Shown piece after piece: positions 6,063 through 39,026 of a stretch of DNA of 64,000 nucleotides. The translations under genes were made by a program, and so were the position numbers. How positions within the stretch are numbered: the stretch's first letter is position 1; each line of letters opens with the position of its first letter. The notes under the pieces were generated by a model. That model was not told the origin of the DNA and ran no database searches. It was given only the letters and a program-made list of their open reading frames with translations. The stretch lies in IMG/VR virus record IMGVR_UViG_3300046543_000266, positions 153,606 through 217,605 of that record; one strand, written 5' to 3'.

Positions 6063-7967
6063 TTACATCGGGAGTGTTGTACGACCGAGCTTTTCTTTGT
6101 TGCGCTTCGCCAGTTCCAGGCGATAGTTCGGATCGCGGTCGGCTTTCGCTGCGATCTTGATGATCCGGCTGTTTGCTTCTGCCTTGGCACGCGGCTGGCT
6201 GATAGACGGGATGTGCTTGATCTTACCCGTCTTCGACAACGTCCAGCTGTCACCACTGTCGCCAAAGTCACGAGACAGCAACGGCTTCCGGTATCCACGT
6301 GAATGCGAAGCCGATTGTGTGGTCAGTTGACCAGCACTAGCACGTTCCAACAAGCGTGCGTGTTCCTGCTTGGCTTCTTCACGTGCGTCGACGCTACCAC
6401 CGAAGTCATCGTCGAACTCGTCAGTGCCGAAGTCGTCTTCACCTTCGTGGCTGGTGTCCTTGCCCGTGTACTTCTCGAGCTTCTTGCGGAGCTCGGCGTC
6501 TTCGTCCAAGTCACGCATCAGCGCATCCGGATCGATCTTCGCAGCAGCCATCCACATCTTCAGCGGGATAGGTACACCCTTGTCGGATGCTTGCTGAAGC
6601 AGTTCCGCCATGTTCTCTTCACCCTTCGCTTCCAACTCCTTATGCCAGTGAAGCTGCGGCATCTTCAGGTTGTTGCGATTGGTGCGGTTGAACAGGAAGT
6701 CAACAACACGGCCAGCCTCTGCGCGTTTGCTCGGATCCTTGTACAGATTGTTGGTAACGGCGACCAGCGGGAAGATCTTCGAGTAGAACACCCGTTCCGT
6801 CATGTCGGTACGGAAGCTGTTCATCGATTCCAGGAACGTGGAGTACGCCGACTCAGCCGAAGCGTAGCTGGCATCACCCGAAAGGAACGACTCCGAGATA
6901 CCGAGTGCCCGCAGCTTGTAGGCAACCAGAATGTCGGCCATGTCGGTCCACTTCCAGAAGTCACCACCAGGACGCAGATCGGTTGCTTGCACGGCGTTAC
7001 GTGTGGATACCCATCCGCCAAGCGGATCCATTTCCGCGCTCTGGAACTCCTGCACCAATGCGCCGAGCTCTTCGCCTGTCGGTGTCCACTGATCGTCACC
7101 TGCGGTCAAGTGGGTCATCGCGCGCTGACGACGTTGCGATTCAACCAACGTACCGCGGAACAGCGTCTTCTCGATGAGGTACATCGGGAGGATGCGGTGC
7201 AGGTACGAGGTGAAGGCCCGGTCCGTTGTCGAACGGCGCGGCACGAACAGCGTAGTCACCGGGTCTAGAGTGAATGCACCCGACTTCAGCATGTCAACGA
7301 ACTGCGACGGCATCTGCTGCAGATAGCGGCGTGCGTACTCCGAGGTATCGTTGAGGAACTGCTGCGTTGACTGTCCAACCCGCACGTTGATCGTGGGGTC
7401 GATGTTGAAGAACGGCGAAGGCATCACGCTGCAGGACAGTGCGTCGTGCAGCAGAGTGTCCATGAACACCTTAGCCTTCGGATCGAACACCAAGCTTCCG
7501 GCGAAGAAGCCGTCCACAAGGTGCGTTGTCGAGATCAACGGCATCATCTGCTGAACGTTGAGGCGCTCCAGCGTTTCATTGAACGGGCGCAGTTCCTTTT
7601 CTTCCAGACCCCGCAGTTCCCAGCTTGAGAACGGGAAGTGCGCCTGAATGTCCACTGCGCTACCTGCCGTGTTATCGAACAGGTAGATGTCCCGATACAT
7701 CAGGGCCAGCGTGGAGGTGTCGACCAGATGCGGATCCGCCGGGATCAGGCCAGTCATGTAATACTGGTAGTTCGATTGCCAGAAGCCGTTGACGGACATC
7801 GAGGCACCACCGGCACCGCTTCCACCACCGAACATCGACATGTTAGCGCTGACCTCTGACTTGCTGGCTTTACGCGAAGCGCGTGCGCTGATACCATTTC
7901 CCTGGGAAGGAGGGGCCATGTTGAAGTTCTTGCCGTTCACACCCAGAATCTTTTGTTTGGCGAACAT
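6063..7967 (-). CDS. Portal protein (T4 gp20-like, divergent)
   Basis: 634 aa. MYRDIY..DNTAGSAVD, FLSGDASYASAE and FYSKIFPLVA segments resemble large-phage portals. Near terminase. Confidence 0.7.
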   Translation of the reverse strand: MFAKQKILGVNGKNFNMAPPSQGNGISARASRKASKSEVSANMSMFGGGSGAGGASMSVNGFWQSNYQYYMTGLIPADPHLVDTSTLALMYRDIYLFDNTAGSAVDIQAHFPFSSWELRGLEEKELRPFNETLERLNVQQMMPLISTTHLVDGFFAGSLVFDPKAKVFMDTLLHDALSCSVMPSPFFNIDPTINVRVGQSTQQFLNDTSEYARRYLQQMPSQFVDMLKSGAFTLDPVTTLFVPRRSTTDRAFTSYLHRILPMYLIEKTLFRGTLVESQRRQRAMTHLTAGDDQWTPTGEELGALVQEFQSAEMDPLGGWVSTRNAVQATDLRPGGDFWKWTDMADILVAYKLRALGISESFLSGDASYASAESAYSTFLESMNSFRTDMTERVFYSKIFPLVAVTNNLYKDPSKRAEAGRVVDFLFNRTNRNNLKMPQLHWHKELEAKGEENMAELLQQASDKGVPIPLKMWMAAAKIDPDALMRDLDEDAELRKKLEKYTGKDTSHEGEDDFGTDEFDDDFGGSVDAREEAKQEHARLLERASAGQLTTQSASHSRGYRKPLLSRDFGDSGDSWTLSKTGKIKHIPSISQPRAKAEANSRIIKIAAKADRDPNYRLELAKRNKEKLGRTTLPM

Positions 7968-8450: not shown

Positions 8451-9292
8451 CGCTGCATCGCCTGAATGATTTCCGTCTTCATCTTGTCGTGCTGCTCTTG
8501 CATGACTGTACCAAGCCGAGTACGACTCTGCACCATGCGCTCCCGGAATTCCTTCATGTTGGATTCGGGCAGCCCCAAGGTCTTGGCGTCATCGGTGATA
8601 AGCGCTAGCTCCTTCATGATCGCCATACCGATGTCCAGCATACCCGGACGCAGCACCTTCTCGACCAGCATCATGCCGACGGCACCGCGGTCTTGCGTGG
8701 ACTGCAGGTCGATCATCAGCTCACGGATCGACTGGACCAAGCCGTTGAACGAGTGAACGCCGTAGCGGCCCTTCGACTCACGAATACCAGCTTCTACTTC
8801 CGAGATCAAGTCGATGGACGTTTGGATAAGCCGCTTGTTCAGCTGGGACAATGCGTTGTCCGCTTCACCAGCTTCCAGCATCTGTTGCAGTGCTTCTGCG
8901 TCATCACCGAGGATAGAGTTCAGACCCTTCTTGTTGAGGCGCGAAATACGACCCGGCTTCTGCGGTTCCAGCACCATGAGCTCAGTCCCCGGTTTATTCG
9001 GGGACGGGGCGGCTTTAGCTTTCTCAGCCTTGGGTGCCAGATGACGCTTGGCCTTCTTTGCTTTCGGAGGACGCGGCCGGAAGTCATTCTCGAAATCCGC
9101 GTCGTCCGGTTCATCTGTGTGGCGCGCCTTCTCAGGCTGTGCTGCCGACTTGTTCTTCCCCTTGCGCAACGGTTGCTCGTCGCCGTCTGCACCTTTCTTC
9201 TTGGATGGCTTTGGACTGGGGGACTGGGAAGGGTTGCTACCGGGACCCGAAATGTTGAACGAAAAGTCCCGTGTTTTAGTTTTCTTCAACAT
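8447..9292 (-). CDS. Hypothetical protein, possible terminase small subunit
   Basis: Basic disordered N-terminus plus helical core (SIRELMIDLQ). Position in the packaging module is the only functional clue. Confidence 0.35.
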   Translation of the reverse strand: MLKKTKTRDFSFNISGPGSNPSQSPSPKPSKKKGADGDEQPLRKGKNKSAAQPEKARHTDEPDDADFENDFRPRPPKAKKAKRHLAPKAEKAKAAPSPNKPGTELMVLEPQKPGRISRLNKKGLNSILGDDAEALQQMLEAGEADNALSQLNKRLIQTSIDLISEVEAGIRESKGRYGVHSFNGLVQSIRELMIDLQSTQDRGAVGMMLVEKVLRPGMLDIGMAIMKELALITDDAKTLGLPESNMKEFRERMVQSRTRLGTVMQEQHDKMKTEIIQAMQR

Positions 9293-9317
9293 CAGCTACT
9301 CCTTTCGTGCGTGCTGG

Positions 9318-9572
9318 TCACTCGCTGTCAGCAACCGGAAGGGCGATACGGTGGTCTTCGCACACGAGAACCGGAATGCCGTTGGCGTGGCTGGCAGTCA
9401 TCGGTTGACGGCATTCGGGACACAGACCCTTGCCTGCGACTTCGGCGCTCATGTCGATGCGCGCAGTCAGCTTCTTCTGGGTGGTAGCGGCAGCCGCGCC
9501 AATCTTCTTCGCGACCGCTTCGCTTTTGGTGGACGATGCTTCGAGATACGCTTTCGGGAATTGCATTGCCAT
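9318..9572 (-). CDS. Small Zn-ribbon protein
   Basis: CPECRQPM...VLVCEDH. Confidence 0.6.
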   Translation of the reverse strand: MAMQFPKAYLEASSTKSEAVAKKIGAAAATTQKKLTARIDMSAEVAGKGLCPECRQPMTASHANGIPVLVCEDHRIALPVADSE

Positions 9573-9574
9573 GA

Positions 9575-10189
9575 TTACACTCGCTTGTTGATTAAGGGCA
9601 TACGGCTACTGTCTTCGACCATCTTGACGATGCCCATCGGCTGGTAGTCAAGGTATTTACCAAGACCGGCTTCCAGACCATACAGACCGATGAAGCTGCA
9701 GTCCAGTTGGTGCGGAGGCGTCCGACAGACACGGTACAGCTGATCAAGAGTGTAGCCTTCGAACCGCCGATGGAACTCGTTCTTCCACGTTGCCGCGGTG
9801 ATGTACTTGACAGGAACGTTGTAGCGGCCAGCCAGCAGACCGTTCATCATCGAGACGCATTCAATGAGCGGACCCATCGAACTACCACCACGCGTCTGGA
9901 ACCGTTCGGCGATGATGCCGTTCGGTTGATAAAGATCGATCCACCTACCAACCTCAGTCAAGAACAGATCGCGCTGCGGGCCGAACTTCGTCAGATCGTA
10001 GATTGGATTGGTCAGGATGGCGTTAGCCAGAACCCCGACCTTTCCGTTCTCGTTCACGGCAACTACCGAGATTCCCATATTGCGACTTCCCGGGTCGAAT
10101 GCCAGCACCCGCTTCGTTGTGGGCTTCAGCTTCACATTGTCCGGCAAGTCATATTCCCGATTGGGCTTTCGTATTTTTCTGCGGGCCAT
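9575..10189 (-). CDS. ruvC: RuvC-like Holliday junction resolvase
   Basis: VLAFDPGSRNMG and IIAERFQ RNase H-fold catalytic motifs. Confidence 0.8.
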   Translation of the reverse strand: MARRKIRKPNREYDLPDNVKLKPTTKRVLAFDPGSRNMGISVVAVNENGKVGVLANAILTNPIYDLTKFGPQRDLFLTEVGRWIDLYQPNGIIAERFQTRGGSSMGPLIECVSMMNGLLAGRYNVPVKYITAATWKNEFHRRFEGYTLDQLYRVCRTPPHQLDCSFIGLYGLEAGLGKYLDYQPMGIVKMVEDSSRMPLINKRV

Positions 10190-10237: not shown

Positions 10238-12517
10238 TTAACGTAAGCCCCTGAATCCTCGGAAGGCGCCACCACTGCGTCCGGCACTGGCGGGCATCGG
10301 CATGGTTGCACGACTCCCGTCGTACGTCCAGTCCTTGGCTTCGTTCAAGCGTTCCATGATTTTCGGATCGTGTAGCTTGGCACCCCACAGCACGAATGCA
10401 CGGAAGATGTCGTCTGTGAATCCGTCACCCTTCTCAGGGCAGCGCGCTTCGCCAACATCTTTCACGGTAACGATCTGGAGCATCAAGTGCGGGACAGGCT
10501 TGCCGAACATATCCGTCTTGTAGTTCTCGACACGTCCGTCCAATATCATACGTTTCTCGGCGTCGTTGATGGTTGGGGCGACGATGTTCTTCTGTCCAAG
10601 CATTGCCACCACTGCGTTGAAATCCTTCCGACGCGGACTGTACTGACGCGCCAAACAACGCGGCTTCTGCGACGGGTTGTTACCCATGTCATCCTTCGCA
10701 CGGTTCAGCAAGTCGATGGATTGCCACTGATCCGCCAGCAATGCCACAGCGTTGAGTTGCTTGAGCATCGGGAGGATCACGTGCTGATACATCATATTGT
10801 GATTGATGCGTCGGCCGTCATGTGGCATACACTCGATGACTGTAGTCAACACGCTCTTGCCTGAGTTGAAGTCGTAGTGACCGCCACACAGCGTGAACGA
10901 GTTATCTACTACTCCAGCGTCGATAGTTACCAGTGACGGCCAGCGGAAGCTACGAACACGATCCAGCTTGAGGTAGACCTCGTCGGCCTTGTCGTACTGG
11001 TAGGTTGCGTTGTGGCTGTTCTGACCGTTAACGAAGATCTCCTCTTCAACAACCTTGGGCTGAATGAACCGCGAGTGTACCGACGGCGGATTAGCCCCGA
11101 AGTCTCGCTCAGCCTTTTCCGGATTGGAGTTGTAGGCCATAGCGATGATCGGATCGTCCTTTTCCATTTCCGGGTGCATTTCCCATGTCGGGAGATTCAC
11201 GCCCAGAATGTACTTGGATCCCACTTCGGTGCGCGACTCAGCCAGCAATCGCATCACCTTATCGCGCTTCGAGATCGGCGACGACACGCACATCATCAGA
11301 GCAGATGGAGCACTGGAAAAGCCAGCGGCCAGCAACTTGCGGCTCACCTTCTGCACCGTAGTCAGACTGTTGGTCAGTGACTTGTGTGCTTCGTCAGCGT
11401 TGGCGCGCTCGGACTGTTCGTCCTCATCTTCGTTACCTTTCGGCAGCGGGAACAAACCCAATTCGTCAAGGGCAGCGCCGATGCGTGTGTCACCCCGGAG
11501 GGTAGTAGAGTTCGGCCCACTCGGGTAGAACTTCATGTTGCGGTGATGGAACGTCAGGTACATTGACGAGTCGCGATACAGTTCTGTGCCTGAACGGGCC
11601 TTGGTATCGTCCAACACTTCGAAGTATGATTGGAACCAGGAACTGTTGTCAATCAGCTTCTTGAACGGAGTCCACAACACGCCGACGGCCTTGTTGAAGT
11701 TCAAGCTGACCATCGTACAGGTCAACTGCGTCGAGGCTTGCATCATAGTAGGAGCGAGCTCCGCGATGTTCGGAAACATCAAATACTGATGGGCCATGTA
11801 CGCAAAGTAGCCAGCGGCCGACGATGATTTGCCGGATCGCTGGCCCAGAACGTTGACTAACTGCTGATAGTGATGCAGACCGTGGTTCTTTATCAGATCC
11901 CACTTGTGACGCTTGCACTTCGGACATACACCGTGCTCCAGCATCACCACGCTCTTCTTCAGGCGATCTGGTTCCAGTGCCTTCGGAATGTTGTAGATGT
12001 CGAATACGCGCTTGTCCGAACAGCACGGGCAGATCTCGGCGAACAACATCAGGCCGATCCACATCTGGCGCGCCCACGGAACGCTGTACTTCGGAGCATC
12101 ACGCGACAGCACATTCATAGTGAAGTCGTAGAAGTTCTTGGCATGAGTAAGCTGTCGTGTATCGATCTTCAGATCACGTAGCGTACCCGTTGCCGGATCC
12201 TCCGCGTCGTTCATGTAAGCCAGGATGTCGAAGTCATCGACGGCCATACCACCTTCTTCGAATCCACCATGCTTGATGATGTACTCGTCAGGCGAGATCT
12301 CCTTGAACTTGATCTTCTTGCCCTTCTTCTTGGCAAGTTTAGCCTTCAGCATCCGCTTCTCGTGGATGCGTTGCATGTCGTCGTCAGACAGCAAGCCCTT
12401 CAGGAAGACGTCGGCATCCGCGTCCATCAAGCTGTCGGTACGAGCCGTTGCCAAGCGATCACTCGCAGACTCCACGGCATTATAATCGATCTTCTGCATG
12501 GCAATCCTATTCTTCAA
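10238..12517 (-). CDS. terL: Terminase large subunit
   Basis: Walker A GQRSGKS, Walker B AALDELG, CVSSP coupling motif, nuclease TIDAG and TDDIFRA. Confidence 0.9.
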   Translation of the reverse strand: MKNRIAMQKIDYNAVESASDRLATARTDSLMDADADVFLKGLLSDDDMQRIHEKRMLKAKLAKKKGKKIKFKEISPDEYIIKHGGFEEGGMAVDDFDILAYMNDAEDPATGTLRDLKIDTRQLTHAKNFYDFTMNVLSRDAPKYSVPWARQMWIGLMLFAEICPCCSDKRVFDIYNIPKALEPDRLKKSVVMLEHGVCPKCKRHKWDLIKNHGLHHYQQLVNVLGQRSGKSSSAAGYFAYMAHQYLMFPNIAELAPTMMQASTQLTCTMVSLNFNKAVGVLWTPFKKLIDNSSWFQSYFEVLDDTKARSGTELYRDSSMYLTFHHRNMKFYPSGPNSTTLRGDTRIGAALDELGLFPLPKGNEDEDEQSERANADEAHKSLTNSLTTVQKVSRKLLAAGFSSAPSALMMCVSSPISKRDKVMRLLAESRTEVGSKYILGVNLPTWEMHPEMEKDDPIIAMAYNSNPEKAERDFGANPPSVHSRFIQPKVVEEEIFVNGQNSHNATYQYDKADEVYLKLDRVRSFRWPSLVTIDAGVVDNSFTLCGGHYDFNSGKSVLTTVIECMPHDGRRINHNMMYQHVILPMLKQLNAVALLADQWQSIDLLNRAKDDMGNNPSQKPRCLARQYSPRRKDFNAVVAMLGQKNIVAPTINDAEKRMILDGRVENYKTDMFGKPVPHLMLQIVTVKDVGEARCPEKGDGFTDDIFRAFVLWGAKLHDPKIMERLNEAKDWTYDGSRATMPMPASAGRSGGAFRGFRGLR

Positions 12518-13226
12518 TTACCGGCGAACGTTTAGGTGTGGGTGTCTTGGGCGTGTCGTCGGAAGACGCTGCTGATTGGGCTTTCTCTTTCGGCCTACGA
12601 CGTTCATCGTCGGAAAGCGCCGGGAAGATGATATTCGCTGGCTGCTTAGGCGTGATTGAGTTGATCAACGAGTCGACTGCAGACCGCGGCAATCCAAGAT
12701 ACTTTGCAATGTAGCGAGCCATCAACAATTGAGATCCGGTCGCTACCATGCGTTCAAATTGCGCGAATTGGGTATTGTCGACCTCAGCGTTCAAGGTACG
12801 CTGGACTACCTCACGTGCTTGCGAGGTGCCCGCCTGAACGGCCAGAGTAAGCGGTCCGAGGTCATTAAGGAAGAACTCTCGTACACGCTCGATGTTGGAT
12901 TGGAGGGCGACTGGAAGCTCGTCAGAGTAGGCACTCTTACGGATCTCCACCTCCTCGGTGATGAGGGATAGTGCGTGCGGGGCCACCACCTTCTTGGTAG
13001 CATTCAACGACTCGTCGAAGGACTGGGTCGGACGGTAGAAGAAGCGGGAACGCCTGGACTTGGTGGTCTTTTTCTTTTTCTTGGGTGCTTCGGGAGCTTC
13101 CACTTCGGGTTGCTGCTGTGACTTCGGTGTCGGGTGGGCCATCACAGTCAGCGCACTGAGAAGATCGTCTGCCACGTCCTCCTGCTTCTTGGTGGACAAA
13201 CTCAGGTGGGATAAACGACTTGCCAT
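12507..13226 (-). CDS. Hypothetical protein
   Basis: Start reassigned to ATG 13226 (MASRLSHL). The ORF-track extension overlaps recA out of frame. Confidence 0.7.
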   Translation of the reverse strand: MASRLSHLSLSTKKQEDVADDLLSALTVMAHPTPKSQQQPEVEAPEAPKKKKKTTKSRRSRFFYRPTQSFDESLNATKKVVAPHALSLITEEVEIRKSAYSDELPVALQSNIERVREFFLNDLGPLTLAVQAGTSQAREVVQRTLNAEVDNTQFAQFERMVATGSQLLMARYIAKYLGLPRSAVDSLINSITPKQPANIIFPALSDDERRRPKEKAQSAASSDDTPKTPTPKRSPVIEE

Positions 13227-13258
13227 TGCGGACCTCTGACTGTGATGGTTGATTACGA

Positions 13259-14812
13259 TTACTCTTCTGCGTCGTCGTCCATGGACTTCGACTTCTTCTG
13301 GTTGCGTTTCGCTACGTACAACTCTTCGCCAACGCCGGAAGCCAACTGGCGGAAGCACCACGAACGCAGATTCATAGGCTTGTAACCCATGCGGTTCGAA
13401 TGCTCGGTCATCTTGGCCTTGTCGCCGAGGACCCATTCCTTGAGTTGCGCCCAGCTGATGACCTTCTTACCAGCGCCCAGACCCTTGAGGTCGATATACA
13501 TATTTTTCCGATTCTTGCCGGTGAGCTGGCCCGTCTGGCGGAGATAGTACACCGTGTCGAAGAACGGGTCGAAACCGCGAGCTTCACCACTGCCGTCTTC
13601 TTCCCACAAGCGAACGAAGCCCATACGACCCGGCGTCCACAGCTTGTTCTTGATAGCCTTGAACCGGACGTAGCGATAACGGTCGGTGCCCTCTACTTCT
13701 ACCGACGGCTCGTGCTCGCGACGATCTTCCGCGTCGAACTTCGGATTGAACGGCAGGTTCGAGGCCAACGGCGTCCATTGGATACGCACGTCACTGTTGA
13801 AGCGCAGTGCCTGTCCACCCGGTTCTGCTTCCTTCGGACCGTACATCGCCATCGGAACAGCACGCAGCTGATTGATACCAATGACCGCGACCATCTTTGA
13901 TGCCAGACGACCCTTCACGCGCGGCAGATGCTTCGAGAACATACGCGCTTGCAACGCCAGCGAGTTGTCGCCGTCTTCCTTGTCGTTCGACGTCGGGTTC
14001 ATTGCCGGATACGAGTCGACCAAGATCAGAGCTTGCAGTGCTCCATCGGGTGCCGGGATCCAGATGCCCTTGCCGTACTTCTTGGACATCGTCTTGTCGG
14101 AATGGCTATCGAGCTTCGCCTTGTTTTCCTTCGTCTCGTCGAACACGAGCCACCACTTACCCGCGATGAACTTCTTGTCCGGCAGCTTCTGCAGCATGTC
14201 GTGCAACCAGTCGAAGAACTTCTCGCCGATGGTTTCCGCACGATAACGCACACGCGGAGCCACCGTCCACTTGCCGGTTTGCGCGTCCTTCTTGCCGAAC
14301 ACTTCCTTGATCGAGATCTTCGCGCCGCAGGTACGCAGAATGTTGGCGACGTAGGGCTTGGAGTTCTTGGTCGAACCTTCGTAGTCCGCCAGCCCGATGA
14401 TCGGGATGTTGGCGTTGATACCAGCGGCCATGATGTGCAGCGCGCCAGTAGTCTTACACGACTGTTCCGGGCCGAAGTGGGTGTACCATGCCGGGCGGAT
14501 ACCACCACCCTCGACGAGGTCCAGCGCCAGAATGCCGGTGGACATCGGCGGTACGTCTTCGAGCAAGTCGCTATCGAAGTCTTGACGGCGGCTGACGTCG
14601 TCGAGCGTATCCGAGTACAGACCAGCGACGTCGAAGGTTACTTCACCCTTCGCACCCTTCTTGCCACGAGGTGCCTTACCTACGACCGCTTCGATTGCTT
14701 CTTCGACTTCGTCTTGCTTGGCGCGGCGTGCTGGAGCTCGCTTGACTGCTGGCGCCTTCTTGGCTGCGACCTTACGGGCCGGAGCCTTAGCTACTGGCTT
14801 CTTTGTTGCCAT
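13259..14812 (-). CDS. recA: RecA/UvsX-like recombinase
   Basis: STGILALD, P-loop variant GPEQSCKT, LILVDSYPAM, INQLR, EPGGQALRFNSDVRI, KAIKNK. Start at ATG 14812. Confidence 0.92.
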   Translation of the reverse strand: MATKKPVAKAPARKVAAKKAPAVKRAPARRAKQDEVEEAIEAVVGKAPRGKKGAKGEVTFDVAGLYSDTLDDVSRRQDFDSDLLEDVPPMSTGILALDLVEGGGIRPAWYTHFGPEQSCKTTGALHIMAAGINANIPIIGLADYEGSTKNSKPYVANILRTCGAKISIKEVFGKKDAQTGKWTVAPRVRYRAETIGEKFFDWLHDMLQKLPDKKFIAGKWWLVFDETKENKAKLDSHSDKTMSKKYGKGIWIPAPDGALQALILVDSYPAMNPTSNDKEDGDNSLALQARMFSKHLPRVKGRLASKMVAVIGINQLRAVPMAMYGPKEAEPGGQALRFNSDVRIQWTPLASNLPFNPKFDAEDRREHEPSVEVEGTDRYRYVRFKAIKNKLWTPGRMGFVRLWEEDGSGEARGFDPFFDTVYYLRQTGQLTGKNRKNMYIDLKGLGAGKKVISWAQLKEWVLGDKAKMTEHSNRMGYKPMNLRSWCFRQLASGVGEELYVAKRNQKKSKSMDDDAEE

Positions 14813-14839
14813 GAGTTCTGTTCCTGGGAAGGGCAAATG

Positions 14840-14878
14840 AAAAGACCCGCCGCGAACGGTCATCTGTTCGGCGGCGGG
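14840..14878 (-). terminator. GC hairpin + U4 (terminator or 5' leader hairpin)
   Basis: CCCGCCGCCGAAC/GTTCGCGGCGGG stem followed by TCTTTTC on the minus strand. Confidence 0.55.
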
Positions 14879-14907
14879 CCCGAGGCTTCACGATGAGTTA
14901 CGTGAGC

Positions 14908-14924: not shown

Positions 14925-16463
14925 TTAGCGACGTGCCTTCTTCACCGGAGCCTTCTTACGTGCGGGCGGCTCGTCGTCCTCGTCTTCATCTTCGTCGTCG
15001 AAGTCATCGTCATCTTCATCTTCTTCCTCGACGACCTTCTTGCTTTTGGCTGCCGTCTTCTTGGCGGGAGCCTTGGCTACCGGCTTCTTGGCACCCTTCT
15101 TGGGCGGCGGGGCTTCGTCTTCATCTTCGTCGTCGAAGTCATCTTCATCTTCGTCATCCGAATCTTCGTCCTCGTCCTCGTCTTCCTCGACGGCGGCCTT
15201 CTTGCCCTTGGCTACAGGCTTCTTCGCCGGGGCTTTCTTGGCACCCTTCTTCGGAGCCGGCTCGTCGTCTTCGTCTTCGTCTTCGTCCTCGTCGTCGAGA
15301 TCGTCGTCTTCGTCTTCCGAGTCTTGATCATCCTCGTCGTCCGAATCTTCGTCCTCGTCTTCATCATCGCCGAAGTCGTCCTCGTCTTCTTCGTCTTCCT
15401 CGACCTTCTTGCCCTTCTTGGCCGGTGCAGCCTTACCCTTCTTGGGCGGCGGTGCATCGTCCTCGTCTTCATCTTCGTCGTCGAAGTCATCGGACTCTTC
15501 GTCCTCGTCTTCTTCGTCTTCCTCAGCAGCCTTCTTGCCCTTGCCCTTTGCCGGAGCAGCCTTCTTGGCGGGAGCCGGTTTGCCCTTGCCCTTCTTCGGC
15601 GCCGGTTCGTCGTCCTCGTCCTCGTCTTCCTCGTCGAGGTCTTCGTCCTCTTCGTAGTCGTCTTCAGCAGCCTTCTTGCCCTTCGACTTCACCTTGATGC
15701 CCATGCGCTTTGCCCACGATTCGTAGTCACGCTTGGTTTCTTCTTCCGTCGATTCAGCAGCCAGATCCGACAGGTCCCACGTGAGGAATGCCAGTTCTTC
15801 TTCGGTCAGCGGCGAACGCTCGCCGATCTGCACGGAGTACTGCTCAGCCGGTGCCTTCGTGCTGTCGAACATGATACGCACGTCGCAACCGAACTTATCG
15901 TGGCTGACTGCGTAGGCCGTCGTGCTGCCAGTCTTCTTCGACGTTACCGTGTTGAGGGGCTTCAGTTCAGCCAGCTTGCGGATAGCGCCGCCCGGCAGTG
16001 CCAGAGCAACCCACGGTGTCCACGTTTCCGAGTCCTTGTCCTTGTGGCCCGACTTGCGTTCGGCAGCCGTCGGCTTCGGCAGACGCGACGGTTGCTGCTT
16101 CTGGGCAGCACGCGACAGAGCGTTGCAGTAGAACTTCTTTGCCACCTGAACCGTCTTCTTGTCGTTCTCGCGGATGTCTTCCTCTTCCTGCACGATTGCA
16201 TACCACGGATCGTACTTCGTGGTGTCGAACTGCTGCGTGTCCGGATCGTACGACGGGAAAGAGACCGGGAACTTCGTGGGCTTGCCGTCCTTCGTCTTCG
16301 TCTTGACCCAACCCGTTGCGTAGCTGAACGTCGGTCCGAAGAAGCGGAACGTCACCCACTTCTTTTCCGGGAACTTGAACAGGTTGATCTTGTCGGTGAT
16401 CTTCGGTTTGTCCGAACGGTTGCCAGTGCGGACGTTATCGAAATCTGTACCCTTTTGAGCCAT
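14925..16463 (-). CDS. gp32-like single-stranded DNA-binding protein with long charge-block tail
   Basis: N-terminal ~260-aa aromatic-rich domain (FRFFGP, KKFYCNAL, FGCDVRI, QYSVQ). Adjacent to recA. C-terminal ~250 aa of alternating D/E and K/P/A blocks. Confidence 0.6.
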   Translation of the reverse strand: MAQKGTDFDNVRTGNRSDKPKITDKINLFKFPEKKWVTFRFFGPTFSYATGWVKTKTKDGKPTKFPVSFPSYDPDTQQFDTTKYDPWYAIVQEEEDIRENDKKTVQVAKKFYCNALSRAAQKQQPSRLPKPTAAERKSGHKDKDSETWTPWVALALPGGAIRKLAELKPLNTVTSKKTGSTTAYAVSHDKFGCDVRIMFDSTKAPAEQYSVQIGERSPLTEEELAFLTWDLSDLAAESTEEETKRDYESWAKRMGIKVKSKGKKAAEDDYEEDEDLDEEDEDEDDEPAPKKGKGKPAPAKKAAPAKGKGKKAAEEDEEDEDEESDDFDDEDEDEDDAPPPKKGKAAPAKKGKKVEEDEEDEDDFGDDEDEDEDSDDEDDQDSEDEDDDLDDEDEDEDEDDEPAPKKGAKKAPAKKPVAKGKKAAVEEDEDEDEDSDDEDEDDFDDEDEDEAPPPKKGAKKPVAKAPAKKTAAKSKKVVEEEDEDDDDFDDEDEDEDDEPPARKKAPVKKARR

Positions 16464-16470
16464 GCTGGTG

Positions 16471-16863
16471 TTACTCCTGTGTGGGATGAGTTGGTCTCGA
16501 CGCGCGCCCTTGTGATTGGTTCATCTGGGCGAGCGACATGGTAAGTGCCTTCTGAATACTATTTACTGTGTGCCGCAGAGTTGCATCGTCGAGCGGCGCA
16601 GCGCTATTCAGGGCAACCAGAGTGGTTTGTAGCAATGCCTGTTGATGCACAGCCAGCTGATTGGCACGCGATTCCAAGTGAGCGGCGACGAGCGTAGCAA
16701 ACTTCTCAATGCCGTCAGCGTCCATCTTCTCGCGCATCATCAACGATACCGCTTGTTCTGCCTGTTGAGTGCGCTGCGAATACTCAGCAAGCAATCCCTT
16801 GTGGGCCTGAAGGGATAGTTCGAGACTGGCCTCCCGATTGGCGTTACGGCTAACGTGCGTCAT
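16471..16863 (-). CDS. Hypothetical coiled-coil protein
   Basis: 130-aa ORF coupled to the sigma gene. Confidence 0.7.
   Translation of the reverse strand: MTHVSRNANREASLELSLQAHKGLLAEYSQRTQQAEQAVSLMMREKMDADGIEKFATLVAAHLESRANQLAVHQQALLQTTLVALNSAAPLDDATLRHTVNSIQKALTMSLAQMNQSQGRASRPTHPTQE
16560..16567 (-). promoter_or_regulatory. AGTAAATA motif
   Basis: In the 3' end of the upstream gene, ~100 nt before the SSB start. Confidence 0.5.
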
Positions 16864-16869
16864 TAAATT
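16863..16869 (-). promoter_or_regulatory. AATTTAA motif
   Basis: Overlaps the stop codon of the sigma-like gene. Confidence 0.35.
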
Positions 16870-17834
16870 TCCAATGCGAACGAGCGCAGTAAGTCACGGT
16901 TCTTGCGGCTCACATGCTCGGGGATTCCGAGACTGGCTCGGATATATCCGTGCGTGTCCGCCTGTTTGGCTACGAAGGCGATGTGTTCTTCGAGCTCACC
17001 ACTGGTATCCGGCATTGTGAAGCCGAGGATATCAGAAGCCGCGTCGCCGTGCGCATCGGTCAGACTCTCGACAGACTGGTCCGATTGTCCACGCGCCATG
17101 TTGGCTACTTCAGAGCGCGCACTCTTGAACCAGTTCTGTATGAATGTGGTAAGAACACCTTGCCGCGCGTCACACCGATCAATCGCCCGCGACACCACGA
17201 TCATGTACGTCTGAGCGACGTCGTCCAATGGAACGTAGTGGTTGAAGTCCTTGTAGGTAGCTTGCGCTTGCATGATCGCCATCCGGGTGTACTTCTGGAC
17301 AATCATCTCCTTGAACTCGCGAGCCTTGTCATACCAGTAACGCACCTGCTGGATTGCGCTATACAGACTACCACCCGGACGCAGTCCCATCTCGCGCTCG
17401 ACCTGATGCATCCGTGAGTTGCGCACCACGTTGTCCACACGGGCAAACGGTGAATGCAACCACTCGTAGTGACGCAACTTCTTCAGGAACATCGACAGGA
17501 AGCCGAACAGCAAGCCTCGGTTGATGTACATGGACTTGGCGTGCTCGTGCGCCTTGGTTATGTCCGGGGCGGTGATTACATTGAACAAGTGGATAGCCAG
17601 TTTGGCCCGGTCATCCGACGTGAACTTGGTACTAGCCTTCAGCGACTGGTGCGCCGTGATCTTCGCCAGATAGTTGTTGAACAGCGACGGGCACTCCGCG
17701 TGAATCGGTTCGAGGGCTTTCCAGAGAAACAGGTCGAGCGTCTGCAGATACTGGAGGCTCGTCAGATTGCCCGTGATACTTTCGGTGATACCCTTCAGCG
17801 AGTCGAAGGCGCGGCTGTGCTCGTAGCTTTTCAT
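16863..17834 (-). CDS. Phage sigma-70-like transcription factor
   Basis: Region-2-like MIVQKYTRMAIMQA..Y..DDVAQ..AIDRCDARQGVLTTFIQNW. Confidence 0.7.
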   Translation of the reverse strand: MKSYEHSRAFDSLKGITESITGNLTSLQYLQTLDLFLWKALEPIHAECPSLFNNYLAKITAHQSLKASTKFTSDDRAKLAIHLFNVITAPDITKAHEHAKSMYINRGLLFGFLSMFLKKLRHYEWLHSPFARVDNVVRNSRMHQVEREMGLRPGGSLYSAIQQVRYWYDKAREFKEMIVQKYTRMAIMQAQATYKDFNHYVPLDDVAQTYMIVVSRAIDRCDARQGVLTTFIQNWFKSARSEVANMARGQSDQSVESLTDAHGDAASDILGFTMPDTSGELEEHIAFVAKQADTHGYIRASLGIPEHVSRKNRDLLRSFALEI

Positions 17835-35499: not shown

Positions 35500-35877
35500 T
35501 TAGTGAGCGGACGAATGCGTGGCCTGAACAACCGGCTCTGAGCGTATCGTCCCACCGAAAGCGTGAGCAAGCTCAACAGGATTCTCGATATCAGTGTCCA
35601 ACAGCACTTCGATGATATTGTGAATCATGGTCTCCACGCCTTCGGGGATAGAGTAGAAGAACGCCGAGTATAGTTCGACATCCCAGATTGGAACCATCAC
35701 CGCGGCGCTTACCACTGCGTCGTACGAGGTGAGGATCACCTGATGGTTAAGCATCCCTGCGACCTTGATAACGTACAGCATGTAGACCACAGGGGTGCCC
35801 TTCTTCTCTTCATCAAATATTGCCCATTCTTCGTCACCCACACGGTCCACGCTGTACCGAATGGTTGTCGTGGTCAT
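35500..35877 (-). CDS. Hypothetical protein
   Basis: 125-aa ORF, ATGA overlap with the polymerase stop. Confidence 0.65.
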   Translation of the reverse strand: MTTTTIRYSVDRVGDEEWAIFDEEKKGTPVVYMLYVIKVAGMLNHQVILTSYDAVVSAAVMVPIWDVELYSAFFYSIPEGVETMIHNIIEVLLDTDIENPVELAHAFGGTIRSEPVVQATHSSAH

Positions 35878-38800: not shown

Positions 38801-39026
38801 CCACCTGACGACTGTACTTGATGGCGTTGCGCACCGACGAGTTGACGGTACGGTCCGACATCAGTTCACCATTGGCTAAGTCCCGACCGTCAACAGTTTG
38901 CATGACGATCAGGATACGACGCTTGGTGTTGCTCCACGTGCTGCACTTCTTCAGCACGAGGTTGTACGGCGACCTCTTCTCGAAGGCGTCCGTACCGAGG
39001 TCGAAGGAAAAGTCTTGGTCTAACAT
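35874..39026 (-). CDS. polA: Family A DNA polymerase with 3'-5' exonuclease and N-terminal UDG-like domain
   Basis: Exo I DTETRN, Exo II FNGMFDL, Exo III YAATDV, motif A DYSAHEVRI, motif B RDAVKKVVFGVLYG, motif C VHDA. Confidence 0.93.
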   Translation of the reverse strand: MLDQDFSFDLGTDAFEKRSPYNLVLKKCSTWSNTKRRILIVMQTVDGRDLANGELMSDRTVNSSVRNAIKYSRQVARPYLKGGSLPEAAYAVVNGNAFKHLHLPPLQRREAEGVFADRIIKLIKKLKPTHILFSGDEIMHGCFPEIKYPQYKRGWVHQLKVGDMPVKVTSTIDFMRLLEKDGAQANLLGFWCRHFAYLQLGRNPHDLSQLKAQPRYIDTIEKFDALMRRFDTATHVGVDTETRNLSVLHNKIYTIQFCTNHNENIGYVLSVDHPLCHWTAEERKYIKQQLRRRFSATTGPLLITFNGMFDLRLIRQCLRIPIIWLKVWEIMFGEHDLDENKNALNGITFMIDPHTGKSSTFGGLAPTYSEYGNDHYYKAIFSKKERETTGTTPPTDKGFLEYAATDVVSIVGIYHQQLARSAAQEIAGKNFKRYFERHMLNQMSDTAHQLSHLRQDGSKVERKYLKHMLGADSPLRKELKRSSGELRVHKEVKQANAELVRESGFKAGSLFGSKAATWMFKFSKSEHKQKLFINILGLDALTQTKTGAPQIDKKFIAHYKDKNKIVSLYGELQGLTKLMGTYVKGWYKKLNTSIDAATNDHLSPDYYVIDTGRLASRGPSLQQIPARGKLSKLIKRMFVASKGYLMIRYDYSAHEVRIWSIASGDKVLAEAFQAGQALRQAFIQDPSDANKKAIKEKGDIHILNVLRFFGKLVDKDHPLRDAVKKVVFGVLYGKGAETLGIDTKEGDMGNLKGKISALYEESLVTKDNKRLIEINKQLEALDVQLGALIAEDRTEYAQGIVDKMFTEFKAGARWTEKMQSMAENEYYVYSPIGRVRHLYAAMTQDRKIVSRQVRRGSNAPVQGFASEIGVKASRITLEAYYKHLRFFKQKLGVEKSDWDLRAFFSRMVHDANYLMVPYEMVVPMIHIMQYQATYGITKAYKDEFNVTFTVEPEIELEFAARDDQSYKWDWSMPNCIQAIKQAVADADELGVLEGTQEDVLQTIFKPWRSKSMRTWLQDQYPLLGVKDLDTQIRSAVKDISPLPKKEKEAA

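What the first reader, a model, noticed from the sequence alone, without database searches (positions are those of the whole stretch)
14925..15700. SSB with a ~250-aa tail of alternating acidic and Lys/Pro/Ala blocks, ending basic
Seen: five D/E blocks interleaved with six basic blocks (PAPKKG, PPPKKG, KKAPAKK), ending RKKAPVKKARR rather than the acidic tip usual for SSBs. Established: blocky charge patterning drives condensate formation in nucleolin/NPM1-type proteins. Inference: a scaffold for a phase-separated replication compartment, or a polyampholyte suited to handling very anionic (phosphorylated or sulfated) DNA.
Basis: partly seen in the sequence, partly recalled or inferred. Interest (0 to 1): 0.6.

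Follow-up and report, generated by a model that had tools for sequence, protein, structure and literature searches.

The report
Phage gp32-type SSB, charge-striped tail
A jumbo phage from rhizosphere soil encodes a T4 gp32-like single-stranded-DNA-binding protein whose usual short acidic tail is replaced by a 260-residue disordered tail of alternating acidic and lysine-rich stripes; the tail is conserved across a whole clade of jumbo phages, has not been studied, and probably organises the phage's replication and recombination proteins.

Summary
Window 14925-16463 (- strand) encodes a 512-aa protein. Residues 254-512 form six Lys/Pro/Ala blocks interleaved with five Asp/Glu blocks (net charge -74; charge segregation z about 19-20 against shuffles) and end in ...RKKAPVKKARR.

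The N-terminal 253 residues are an SSB of the T4/RB69 gp32 fold. gp32 is the only clear structural match (Z 10.2/10.0, next 4.7). The domain has no Pfam or PDB sequence hit and lacks gp32's zinc site.

The striped tail is a family trait, not a quirk. It occurs in more than 70 homologues, including Burkholderia phage BcepSauron, Ralstonia phage phiRSL1, Achromobacter phage Motura and Erwinia, Xanthomonas, Pseudomonas and Vibrio jumbo phages, always beside a UvsX/RecA-like recombinase.

Each acid block carries one Phe/Leu in a DD-F-DD context, like the DDF/DDL motifs of gp32's own acidic domain.

Family members end in one of two ways: acidic (DDDIPF, DDFDD) or basic (KKRK, KKARR). The label changed at least 5-7 times on the tree, and the basic, Arg-rich tip dominates the window's clade.

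Best reading: an enlarged gp32 "A-domain" that gates DNA binding and docks partners multivalently. Condensate formation is plausible but untested. Nothing supports the modified-DNA idea.

The parts
14925..16463 (-). Complete CDS of the 512-aa gp32-type SSB (P0001), stop codon included
   Evidence: ORF list and translation. PHROG 15004 'single strand DNA binding protein', E 7.3e-77. 74 homologues.
15705..16463 (-). N-terminal domain, aa 1-253: a disordered first ~25 residues, then a gp32-like OB-fold core (pI 8.9, net +5)
   Evidence: AF2 model pLDDT 89.6, pTM 0.82. Foldseek top hits are RB69 and T4 gp32 core, prob 1.0. VIA-align Z 10.2 and 10.0 over 182 and 179 residues; next best 4.7. BFVD hits are phage SSBs. 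Charge.
14928..15704 (-). Disordered polyampholyte tail, aa 254-512: six K/P/A blocks and five D/E blocks, net -74, pI 4.05
   Evidence: Block segmentation and shuffle test. AF2 full-length pLDDT 41-52 with no secondary structure. Internal DNA repeats of 74-88% identity.
15600..15668 (-). Acid block A1 (aa 266-288), with Y270 and L276
15528..15599 (-). Basic block B2 (aa 289-312), PKKGKGKPAPAKKAAPAKGKGKK
15450..15527 (-). Acid block A2 (aa 313-338), with the DD-F327-DD motif
15402..15449 (-). Basic block B3 (aa 339-354)
15255..15401 (-). Acid block A3 (aa 355-403): double length, two hydrophobic motifs (F364, L389), apparently two fused units
15192..15254 (-). Basic block B4 (aa 404-424)
15108..15191 (-). 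Acid block A4 (aa 425-452), with the DD-F443-DD motif
15033..15107 (-). Basic block B5 (aa 453-477)
14964..15032 (-). Acid block A5 (aa 478-500), with the DD-F488-DD motif
14928..14963 (-). Terminal basic block B6 (aa 501-512, ARKKAPVKKARR). It holds all three Arg residues of the tail and belongs to the clade-typical Arg-rich basic tip.
   Evidence: In 27 basic-tip homologues, Arg is enriched in the terminal block relative to internal blocks (odds ratio 1.96, Fisher p 4e-4, not corrected for phylogeny).
14832..14881 (-). Intrinsic-terminator-like hairpin (15 pairs, 14843-14881) plus U-run, directly after the SSB stop
   Evidence: RNA fold -36.8 kcal/mol, z -3.7, none of 200 shuffles as good. 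The pattern scan finds the inner stem plus T-run. An equivalent GC hairpin plus T-run follows the SSB stop in BcepSauron, phiRSL1, Motura, L009 and L010.
13259..14812 (-). Neighbouring UvsX/RecA-like recombinase. The likely true start is ATG 14812 (MATKK...). It has a Lys/Ala/Pro-rich N-terminal tail and an acidic C-terminus (DDDAEE). It is a candidate client of the SSB tail.
   Evidence: Pfam RecA 6.5e-19 and PHROG 97 UvsX-like 3.1e-46. Homologues start MATKK/MAKK and carry similar basic N-tails. SSB-recombinase adjacency is conserved in every relative examined.
16471..16863 (-). Conserved small ORF (130 aa) between the sigma-factor gene and the SSB gene; function unknown
   Evidence: A gene of 106-141 aa sits at the same position in BcepSauron, phiRSL1, Motura, L009 and L010. 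No Pfam, PHROG or Atlas lead.

Best explanation
This is the replication and recombination SSB of a 217.6-kb jumbo phage with direct terminal repeats. It has the three-part plan of T4 gp32: a short flexible N-terminus, an OB-fold core that binds ssDNA, and a C-terminal acidic protein-interaction domain.

Shown here. The core has the gp32 fold but no zinc site. The C-terminal domain is about five times longer than in T4, is predicted to be disordered, and is built from degenerate repeat units. Each unit is a D/E tract with one embedded Phe/Leu (DD-F-DD-EDEDEDD), followed by (E/A)PxPKKG and a Lys/Pro/Ala tract. This design is conserved across a wide clade of jumbo phages. The protein can end either on an acid half-unit or on an Arg-rich basic half-unit.

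Inferred by analogy with gp32. (1) The acid tracts compete with ssDNA for the mildly basic core groove (core pI 8.9), so they gate and tune binding. (2) The repeated acid-plus-hydrophobic motifs act as several equivalent docking sites for phage DNA enzymes. The first candidate is the adjacent UvsX-like recombinase, whose own N-terminal K/A/P tail is electrostatically complementary. The Dda-like helicase and the family A polymerase encoded in the window are further candidates. (3) The interleaved Lys tracts and the basic tip pair with acid tracts of the same or neighbouring SSB molecules, or touch DNA. That would give long-range cooperativity along coated ssDNA and, at high local concentration with cationic clients, possibly a condensed replication and recombination zone.
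For: Identity: PHROG 15004 at E 7e-77. A confident AF2 model. gp32 is the only clear PDB match by two independent aligners. BFVD matches are phage SSBs.

Link to gp32: distant family members (Erwinia Y3, Xanthomonas PhiXhv-15) keep an H...C...CPxC pattern in the same region as gp32's H64/C77/C87-P-V-C90.

Context: conserved order sigma factor - small ORF - SSB - UvsX/RecA-like, with a conserved terminator after the SSB gene.

Tail: predicted disordered. Charge segregation is far beyond chance in this protein and across 76 tails (median kappa 0.63, median z 16.5). 72% of the tails' hydrophobic residues sit inside acid tracts. T4 gp32's own A-domain carries DDL/DDF motifs. Internal DNA repeats are only 74-88% identical, so the array is old and maintained rather than fresh slippage.

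Literature: gp32's C-terminal region recruits Dda and other proteins, and its acidic end is thought to occupy the ssDNA site (PMC11551737, PMC12893549). Recombinases of all relatives carry K/A/P-rich N-tails.
Against: There is no sequence-level link to gp32. Pfam, PDB phmmer and hmmsearch, and hhalign were all negative, so homology rests on fold and a motif pattern.

The window protein has no Zn ligands and no N-terminal Lys-Arg-Lys 'LAST'-like motif, so gp32's cooperativity mechanism may not carry over.

No binding partner has been shown. The one complex prediction gave no verdict.

All functional roles assigned to the tail are analogy or inference.

T4's Dda-binding segment (248-269) is amphipathic rather than highly acidic (PMC11551737), so the DD-F-DD motifs may not be the docking elements.
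Confidence: 0.55

Rival explanations
1. Condensate scaffold. The blocky polyampholyte tail drives liquid-liquid phase separation of SSB, alone or with ssDNA and cationic clients, to build a membraneless replication and recombination compartment in the infected cell. This overlaps with the best explanation rather than excluding it. The difference is that condensation would be the primary selected function.
For: Very high charge segregation is conserved family-wide. The tail is disordered. It is multivalent, with 5-6 units. The neighbouring recombinase and other proteins of the phage carry complementary K/A/P tails. E. coli SSB phase-separates through its disordered tail (PMC7584906). T4 gp32 and UvsX form droplets in crowded buffer (PMC11951158).
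Against: The net charge of the tail is -74 (f- 0.47 against f+ 0.19). Such an unbalanced chain should repel itself unless polycations or client tails neutralise it. T4 gp32 droplets needed PEG (PMC11951158). There is no experimental or localisation data for any member of this family. This genome lacks the homospermidine synthase that phiRSL1 and Motura carry (PMC9992855).
Confidence: 0.25
2. Polyanionic shield or DNA mimic. The acid tracts, about 120 negative charges per molecule, form a brush around SSB-coated ssDNA. The brush repels or soaks up host DNA-binding proteins such as nucleases, restriction or defence sensors and host SSB clients. In relatives ending in DDDIPF, the tip additionally hijacks host SSB-interacting proteins.
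For: Charge density is comparable to nucleic acid. Motura and several metagenomic homologues end in ...DDDIPF; from prior knowledge this is the C-terminal tip of E. coli SSB, and it was not compared with a host sequence here. The tip identity switches repeatedly, as expected under conflict-driven evolution.
Against: Known DNA-mimic anti-restriction proteins are folded, not disordered. The regular Lys tracts and the conserved junction motif are not explained by a simple decoy. There is no defence or counter-defence context around the gene.
Confidence: 0.1
3. Functionally neutral low-complexity expansion produced by replication slippage in a GA-rich repeat and tolerated because it is disordered.
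For: Unit number and tail length vary between homologues, from about 180 to 280 aa and 3-9 acid blocks. Contigs from two rhizosphere runs join across a 36-nt repeat and skip 483 nt in frame.
Against: The architecture persists in N-domain relatives down to about 30% identity and in phages of at least seven host genera. The junction motif and the one-hydrophobic-per-acid-tract rule are conserved. Internal repeats have diverged to 74-88% DNA identity while keeping the pattern.
Confidence: 0.05
4. Adaptation to hyper-anionic (phosphorylated or sulfated) modified DNA.
For: None found beyond the presence of Lys tracts.
Against: The tail is net strongly negative, which would repel more anionic DNA. 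The same tail occurs in many phages for which no such modification is known to me. No modification genes lie next to the gene.
Confidence: 0.02

Closest known systems
Bacteriophage T4 / RB69 gp32 (PDB 1gpc, 2a1k, 8gme)
   Same: The fold of the ssDNA-binding core (Z about 10, about 180 aligned residues). The three-part layout, with a flexible N-terminus and an acidic, disordered C-terminal domain carrying DD-F/DD-L motifs. Genetic association with a UvsX-type recombinase and a Dda-type helicase.
   Different: No detectable sequence similarity. No Zn(His/Cys3) site in the window's clade. No N-terminal KRKST motif. The C-terminal domain is 259 aa against 48 aa. It is interleaved with Lys/Pro/Ala tracts and here ends basic. 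The phage's polymerase is family A, not T4's family B.
Orthologues in cultured jumbo phages: BcepSauron gp242, phiRSL1 ORF222, Motura gp037 (RefSeq 'single strand DNA binding protein'); more distantly Erwinia Y3 gp242, Xanthomonas PhiXhv-15, Pseudomonas HRDY3, Vibrio GR11A
   Same: N-domain identity of 63%, 57% and 42% for the first three. The same striped tail of about 240-255 aa. The same gene order. The distant members also have striped tails.
   Different: BcepSauron, phiRSL1 and Motura end acidic (DDLDD, DDFGDDDE, DDDIPF), whereas the window ends KKARR. Y3 and PhiXhv-15 keep the putative Zn ligands. None has been characterised biochemically in the literature I could search.
Bacterial SSB (E. 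coli type): OB core, disordered linker, acidic tip
   Same: An ssDNA-binding OB domain followed by a long disordered tail that mediates partner recruitment, cooperativity and, in vitro, phase separation (PMC7584906). Some family members even carry the same DDDIPF tip.
   Different: A different OB family. The E. coli linker is Gly/Pro/Gln-rich and nearly uncharged, not a charged polyampholyte. The window protein has no acidic or Phe C-terminus.
Eukaryotic nucleolar charge-block proteins (Nopp140/NOLC1, nucleolin N-terminus, NPM1, UBF tail)
   Same: From prior knowledge, not tested here: alternating acidic tracts and Lys/Ala/Pro-rich basic tracts in a disordered region, and an association with condensates.
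   Different: No homology; this is compositional convergence only. The eukaryotic acid tracts are often Ser-rich and phosphorylated, whereas these are pure D/E with a single aromatic or Leu residue.
Histone H1 C-terminal domain and bacterial H1-like K/P/A repeats (AlgP, HupB C-terminus)
   Same: From prior knowledge: the PAKK/KKAAPAKK-type composition of the basic blocks and of the recombinase's N-tail, which bind nucleic acid or polyanions non-specifically.
   Different: Here the basic tracts are short (12-25 aa) and outnumbered about 2.5:1 in charge by flanking acid tracts in the same chain.

Membership tests
PHROG 15004 (phage 'single strand DNA binding protein') | Significant match to the family profile over the N-terminal domain | tested here: met
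   E 7.3e-77 for the whole protein and 3.5e-68 for aa 1-260, covering profile positions 2-254 of 421.
T4 gp32 family | gp32-type OB-fold core topology | tested here: met
   Foldseek: RB69 and T4 gp32 at E 3.9e-5 to 6e-4, prob 1.0, about 250 columns. VIA-align Z 10.2 and 10.0, rmsd 3.5 and 3.8, 182 and 179 residues, next hit Z 4.7.
T4 gp32 family | Sequence-level membership (Pfam gp32 model, or similarity to solved gp32) | tested here: not met
   No Pfam hit for this protein or five relatives. phmmer and profile hmmsearch against PDB found nothing. hhalign against T4 gp32 gave probability 0.1.
T4 gp32 family | Structural Zn site (His64, Cys77, Cys87, Cys90) | tested here: not met
   The window N-domain has only two Cys (113, 193) and neither is conserved. 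Equivalent columns hold Y/D/P/W. Distant members Y3 and PhiXhv-15 do have H...C...CPxC there.
T4 gp32 family | N-terminal basic cooperativity motif (Lys-Arg-Lys-Ser-Thr) | tested here: inconclusive
   Residues 1-25 are flexible (pLDDT 50-58) and contain scattered K/R and conserved D7 and D24, but no KRK cluster. A KRK/KRR-like cluster sits at the C-terminal tip instead.
T4 gp32 family | Acidic, disordered C-terminal protein-interaction domain | tested here: met
   Present in a much enlarged and modified form: 259 aa, 47% D/E, pLDDT below 52, DD-F/L motifs as in T4's A-domain.
T4 gp32 family | Cooperative ssDNA binding and helix destabilisation | not testable with these tools
   Needs purified protein.
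Bacterial SSB (Pfam PF00436 type) | SSB-family OB domain, and a C-terminal acidic tip ending in hydrophobic residues (DDDIPF) | tested here: not met
   No Pfam SSB hit. Bacterial SSB structures align only at Z about 3. The protein ends KKARR.
Charge-block condensate scaffolds (functional class, not a homology family) | Disordered region with strongly segregated opposite charges | tested here: met
   kappa about 0.67, z 19-20. Predicted disordered.
Charge-block condensate scaffolds (functional class, not a homology family) | Demonstrated phase separation or focal localisation | not testable with these tools
   No data exist for any family member in the searched literature.

The most novel reading that the evidence does not exclude
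A large clade of jumbo phages (BcepSauron-, phiRSL1-, Motura- and Erwinia Y3-like) has turned the gp32 acidic domain into a nucleolar-style charge-block scaffold. The scaffold co-condenses with the Lys/Ala/Pro tails of the recombinase and other phage proteins to form a membraneless replication and recombination factory in bacteria. The interchangeable tip acts as a switch for which clients or neighbours are engaged: an acidic tip (in some members DDDIPF, the bacterial SSB tip as I recall it) or an Arg-rich basic tip resembling gp32's N-terminal Lys-Arg-Lys cooperativity motif moved to the end of a long tether.
Probability: 0.2. Interest if true: 0.75.

Novelty: new variant of a known kind. Interest (0 to 1): 0.55.

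Why it matters
gp32 is the textbook phage SSB, and its 48-residue acidic domain is the hub that assembles the T4 replisome and recombination machinery. This family keeps the gp32 core fold but has replaced that hub with a 180-280-residue, strongly charge-patterned disordered region. It has done so stably across phages of Burkholderia, Ralstonia, Achromobacter, Erwinia, Dickeya, Xanthomonas, Pseudomonas and Vibrio.

That offers a natural series for testing how charge patterning in a disordered tail controls ssDNA-binding cooperativity, partner recruitment and condensation in bacteria. The series varies in unit number, acid:base ratio, and acidic versus basic tip, and it includes a tip matching the bacterial SSB tip (DDDIPF). 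Several members come from phages that can be grown.

The proteins are annotated only as "SSB" or "hypothetical protein" in public records. I found no paper that mentions the tail.

Tried and rejected
1. Sequence bridges to gp32 all failed. These were Pfam on the window protein and five relatives, phmmer and profile hmmsearch against PDB sequences, and hhalign of the family profile against T4 gp32. The gp32 assignment therefore rests on fold and the H/C/CPxC pattern in distant members.

2. A complex prediction of the UvsX-like recombinase (aa 60-534) with the last two tail units (aa 425-512) scored 0.00 and returned 'no answer'. It is not evidence either way.

3. Polyamine counter-ion idea. phiRSL1 and Motura encode homospermidine synthase (PMC9992855), but this genome has no PF03435-type gene. 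The idea was dropped as a general explanation.

4. Looked for a remnant of an acidic tip after the stop codon, or a basic remnant after the stops of acid-tipped relatives. None was found in any frame. The intergenic DNA is a terminator in all of them.

5. Small ORF 16471-16863 as a possible UvsY-like mediator. There is no PHROG, Pfam or Atlas lead, and the Atlas model has low confidence.

6. The second striped protein of the genome (G000 9144-10052) has no PHROG or Pfam family.

7. Population variation from public runs. Only Logan contigs were available. Depth in the tail is swamped by unrelated GA-rich low-complexity contigs. The one clean structural variant, a 483-nt in-frame skip, lies at a 36-nt repeat and cannot be told apart from assembly collapse. 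No RNA run holds the region.

8. Near-constant tail net charge. It looked constant at about -67 in many close relatives, but over all basic-tip proteins it is -59 +/- 13, so no claim is made.

9. The big representative-protein search was not run. The word search already gave 74 relatives, and no claim here rests on absence of relatives.
Full report
**What is there.** The window is the last 64 kb of a 217,605-bp IMG/VR virus record with direct terminal repeats, so it comes from a complete jumbo phage genome. The same sequence is held by many rhizosphere metagenome runs. On the minus strand, 14925..16463 is a 512-codon ORF.

Its gene neighbourhood on the same strand contains these genes:
- portal, 6063-7967
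- RuvC-like resolvase, 9575-10189
- large terminase, 10238-12517
- UvsX/RecA-like recombinase, 13259-14812
- this gene
- a 130-aa ORF, 16471-16863
- a phage sigma factor, 16863-17834
- further away, a family A DNA polymerase (35874-39026) and a Dda/Pif1-like helicase (40436-42313)

**Checking the observation.** The quoted PAPKKG, PPPKKG and KKAPAKK strings are present, and so is the ending RKKAPVKKARR.

The tail is 47% Asp+Glu, 19% Lys+Arg, 12% Ala and 8% Pro, with net charge -74 and pI 4.05. The N-terminal half has pI 8.9. A Das-Pappu-type segregation measure is 19 standard deviations above 2000 shuffles of the same residues, giving kappa of about 0.67.

The basic end is not an artefact. The stop is followed by 112 non-coding bases with no acid-coding remnant in any frame. 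Those bases contain a 15-pair GC-rich hairpin plus U-run (-36.8 kcal/mol, z -3.7).

The ORF finder's start for the recombinase (14863) runs across this hairpin. All homologues start MATKK/MAKK, which puts the real start at 14812.

**Finer anatomy of the tail.** The tail is a degenerate tandem array. Each unit reads roughly (E/A)-P-(A/P)-P-K-K-G, then a K/A/P/G tract, then K-K-(A/V)-(A/V), then E-E-D-E..., then D-D-[F/L]-D-D-E-D-E-D-E-D-D.

Every acid unit has one hydrophobic residue: Y270/L276, F327, F364, L389, F443 and F488. All but F364 lie 8-15 residues before an (E/A)PxPKK junction. The double-length third acid block has two such residues (F364 in its upstream half, L389 before the junction) and looks like two units that lost the basic tract between them.

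At DNA level the units match each other at only 74-88% identity over 60-214 nt, so the array is old rather than a fresh slippage product. Tandem Repeats Finder sees only short 6-27-nt periodicities. All three Arg residues of the tail lie in the last block.

AlphaFold2 with a 36-sequence alignment gives pLDDT 41-52 and no secondary structure for residues 260-512, while the N-domain stays above 90.

**What the N-terminal domain is.** Pfam finds nothing, and PDB sequences give no hit with either the single sequence or a 44-sequence profile. PHROG 15004, annotated 'single strand DNA binding protein', matches at E 3.5e-68 over residues 2-254.

An AlphaFold2 model of residues 1-262 is confident (pLDDT 89.6, pTM 0.82). 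Two independent structure searches agree:
- Foldseek against the PDB returns RB69 gp32 core, T4 gp32 core and the gp32-Dda-dT17 complex as the top entries. The five best chains score E 3.9e-5 to 1.1e-3 (probability 1.0, about 250 aligned columns), a sixth gp32 chain scores 3.3e-2, and unrelated chains begin at about 0.1.
- The Foldseek-independent VIA-align search of 48,161 chains gives Z 10.2 (182 residues, rmsd 3.5) and Z 10.0 (179 residues) for the same two proteins. The next hit is Z 4.7, followed by generic OB folds at about Z 3.

BFVD matches are phage SSBs, including those of T4-like phages. So the domain is a gp32-type SSB core.

hhalign against the T4 sequence shows no sequence signal. 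There is still a telling pattern. The more distant family members Erwinia phage Y3 and Xanthomonas phage PhiXhv-15 carry His...Cys...Cys-Pro-x-Cys in the region where T4 gp32 has its zinc ligands (His64, Cys77, Cys87-Pro-Val-Cys90). Pseudomonas phage HRDY3 has lost three of the four together. The window's clade has none, with Y-D-P-W in place of C-P-x-C. This fits descent from a zinc-bearing gp32-like ancestor followed by loss of the site. It remains an inference, because the global alignment at 14% identity is off by three residues in register.

**The tail is a family character.**
- tblastn against 50,697 phage records finds the N-domain in 88 records. They include Burkholderia phages BcepSauron and BcepSaruman (63%), Ralstonia phage phiRSL1 (57%), Achromobacter phage Motura (42%), Burkholderia BCSR5, and at about 30-37% many Erwinia, Dickeya, Xanthomonas, Pseudomonas, Vibrio and Yersinia jumbo phages.
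- The word-index search adds 74 proteins, mostly metagenomic and 440-530 aa long.
- Every full-length member inspected has a striped tail: BcepSauron gp242, phiRSL1 ORF222 and Motura gp037; Y3, GR11A, HRDY3 and PhiXhv-15; and all metagenomic ones.
- Over 76 distinct tails, the median kappa is 0.63 and the median z against shuffles is 16.5.
- 72% of all F/L/W/Y/I/M residues in the tails are embedded in acid tracts.
- The number of blocks varies from about 3 to 9 acid blocks and tail length from about 180 to 280 aa.
- Gene order is conserved in every genome examined: sigma factor, small ORF, SSB, UvsX/RecA-like. So is a GC hairpin plus T-run directly after the SSB stop.

RefSeq already labels several of these proteins 'single strand DNA binding protein', presumably by PHROG transfer. 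GenBank versions mostly say 'hypothetical protein'. I found no paper that discusses the tail. A comparative survey of jumbo phages mentions gp32 orthologues only in passing.

**The basic end.** The family has two kinds of C-terminus.
- Acidic, with a hydrophobic residue near the end: DDDIPF in Motura and several metagenomic proteins, DDFDD, DFDDDEF, DDLDD and DDDLDF. From prior knowledge, DDDIPF is the tip of bacterial SSB. That was not checked against a host sequence here.
- Basic...KKRK...AKRK...KRRK...KKRR...KKARR and ...KRRR.

A maximum-likelihood tree of 73 N-domains has 27 basic and 46 acidic tips. It needs 7 changes of the label, and starred branches force at least 5, against 18.7 expected for shuffled labels. 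The window sits in a well-supported group of 28 rows, of which 22 end basic. BcepSauron and phiRSL1 are acidic exceptions inside that group. Two basic-tip genes were checked on 87-kb and 231-kb contigs; they are complete internal genes with the usual neighbours.

The basic tip is more than a truncated internal block. Arg makes up 21% of K+R in terminal blocks against 12% in internal ones (Fisher p 4e-4, not corrected for shared ancestry). By my count of the tips listed, about half of the last three residues in the window's clade are Arg.

In repeat terms, acid-tipped proteins stop just after the D-D-[F/L]-D-D of a unit, and basic-tipped ones stop after a K/P/A tract capped by [KR]R[KR].

**How it most likely works.** Shown: gp32-type core, disordered charge-striped tail, conserved unit design, alternative tips, and conserved linkage to the recombinase. 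Everything else is inferred from T4.

In gp32 the core holds the ssDNA trough. The N-terminal Lys-Arg-Lys-Ser-Thr motif binds the neighbouring molecule to give cooperativity. The C-terminal domain recruits replication and recombination proteins (PMC12893549). Residues 248-269 bind Dda through hydrophobic positions, and the acidic end 273-301 is thought to occupy the ssDNA site when DNA is absent (PMC11551737). T4's 48-residue A-domain itself contains DDLDAF, VDDF, EDDF and DLDDLL.

I therefore read the window's tail as a multiplied A-domain.
- The acid tracts act as an intramolecular competitor for the mildly basic core.
- The D-D-F-D-D motifs act as several equivalent docking sites.
- The Lys tracts and basic tip pair with acid tracts in cis or in trans, or contact DNA. 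On ssDNA coated with many SSBs this would create long-range cross-links.

The obvious first client is the neighbouring recombinase. Its N-terminus (MATKKPVAKAPARKVAAKKAPAVKRAPARRAK) has the same composition as the SSB's basic tracts, and this holds in all relatives.

Condensate formation is a reasonable extension, since E. coli SSB (PMC7584906) and gp32/UvsX with PEG (PMC11951158) do it. However, the tail's large net negative charge means it should need cationic partners. I rate condensation as the primary function at about 0.25. I found nothing to support the idea of handling hyper-anionic DNA.

**What did not work.** A complex prediction of the recombinase with the last two tail units returned no verdict and is not used. 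The polyamine link was not borne out: phiRSL1 and Motura encode homospermidine synthase (PMC9992855), but this genome has no such gene. The small upstream ORF and a second charge-striped protein elsewhere in the genome have no recognisable family.

Public runs gave only assembled contigs and no RNA. In two runs, otherwise perfect contigs of 2.3 and 5.2 kb skip 14974-15456. This is 483 nt, in frame, about 161 codons, and it would give a 351-aa protein that keeps the basic tip. The join lies in a 36-nt repeat, longer than the assembler's word as I recall it (31 nt for Logan), so it may be an assembly collapse.

**Verdict.** The SSB call is confirmed and sharpened to a zinc-less gp32-type SSB. 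The 'odd' basic end is a clade-typical alternative tip. The condensate interpretation remains a plausible, untested hypothesis.

The protein belongs to a family already in the databases under a generic name, but its enlarged, charge-patterned A-domain and tip dimorphism appear undescribed. It is a new variant of a known kind, of moderate interest, and cultivable relatives are available for direct tests.

Noticed in passing
window 14832-14881 (- strand); L001 5528-5621, L002 5465-5548, L003 5507-5587, L009 4447-4527, L010 4576-4676: A GC-rich hairpin followed by a T-run sits directly after the SSB stop codon in the window and in all five relatives checked. The stem sequences differ between phages. 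It is probably a conserved intrinsic terminator or attenuator separating the SSB gene from the recombinase gene.
   Followed up: partly
window 13259-14863 (- strand): The mechanical ORF for the UvsX/RecA-like recombinase starts at 14863, but homologues start MATKK, which puts the start at 14812. The protein has a 30-aa Lys/Ala/Pro-rich N-terminal tail and an acidic C-terminus (DDDAEE). Recombinases of all relatives have similar basic N-tails.
   Followed up: partly
L003 3992-5506 (Motura gp037); proteins P0039, P0042, P0043, P0077: Several family members end in ...DDDIPF. From prior knowledge this is the C-terminal tip of E. coli-type bacterial SSB, which suggests these gp32-fold phage SSBs could engage host SSB-interacting proteins. 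It was not compared with a host sequence here.
   Followed up: no
L005 2489-3751 (Erwinia phage Y3), L008 2453-3850 (Xanthomonas PhiXhv-15), L007 2471-3664 (Pseudomonas HRDY3): Distant members keep an H...C...CPxC pattern in the same region as gp32's zinc ligands. HRDY3 has lost three of the four together, and the window's clade has lost all of them.
   Followed up: partly
L012 245-1150 (= G000:C1:9144-10052, outside the window): A second charge-patterned protein in the same phage (302 aa). It has a ~100-aa Ala/Lys/Pro/Arg-rich N-terminus, a ~100-aa beta-rich middle and a ~100-aa pure Asp/Glu/Gly tail ending ...DEDELF. No Pfam or PHROG family was found.
   Followed up: partly
window 14974-15456: Contigs from two rhizosphere runs (X5 2311 nt, X6 5170 nt), otherwise identical to the window, skip these 483 nt in frame at a 36-nt direct repeat. 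This is either a natural short-tail allele (351 aa, tip kept) or a k-mer assembly collapse.
   Followed up: partly
L009 4528-7095: In one close relative (an 87-kb Logan contig) the RecA-like gene is 855 aa and carries NUMOD4 and HNH_3 domains. This suggests a homing endonuclease or intein-like insertion in the recombinase.
   Followed up: no
window 16471-16863 (- strand): A 130-aa, apparently helical ORF is conserved in position between the sigma-factor and SSB genes in all close relatives. Its size and position would suit a recombination mediator, but no search gave any lead.
   Followed up: partly
window 35874-39026 and 40436-42313 (- strand): The phage combines a gp32-fold SSB and a UvsX-like recombinase with a family A DNA polymerase (with 3'-5' exonuclease) and a Dda/Pif1-like SF1 helicase carrying a 225-aa N-terminal extension. 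The replisome is therefore not T4-like overall.
   Followed up: no
window 12507-13436 (- strand): The mechanical 309-aa ORF overlaps the 3' end of the recombinase gene by 178 nt. An internal Met (MASRLSHL...) just after the recombinase stop is the more likely start. No family was found.
   Followed up: no
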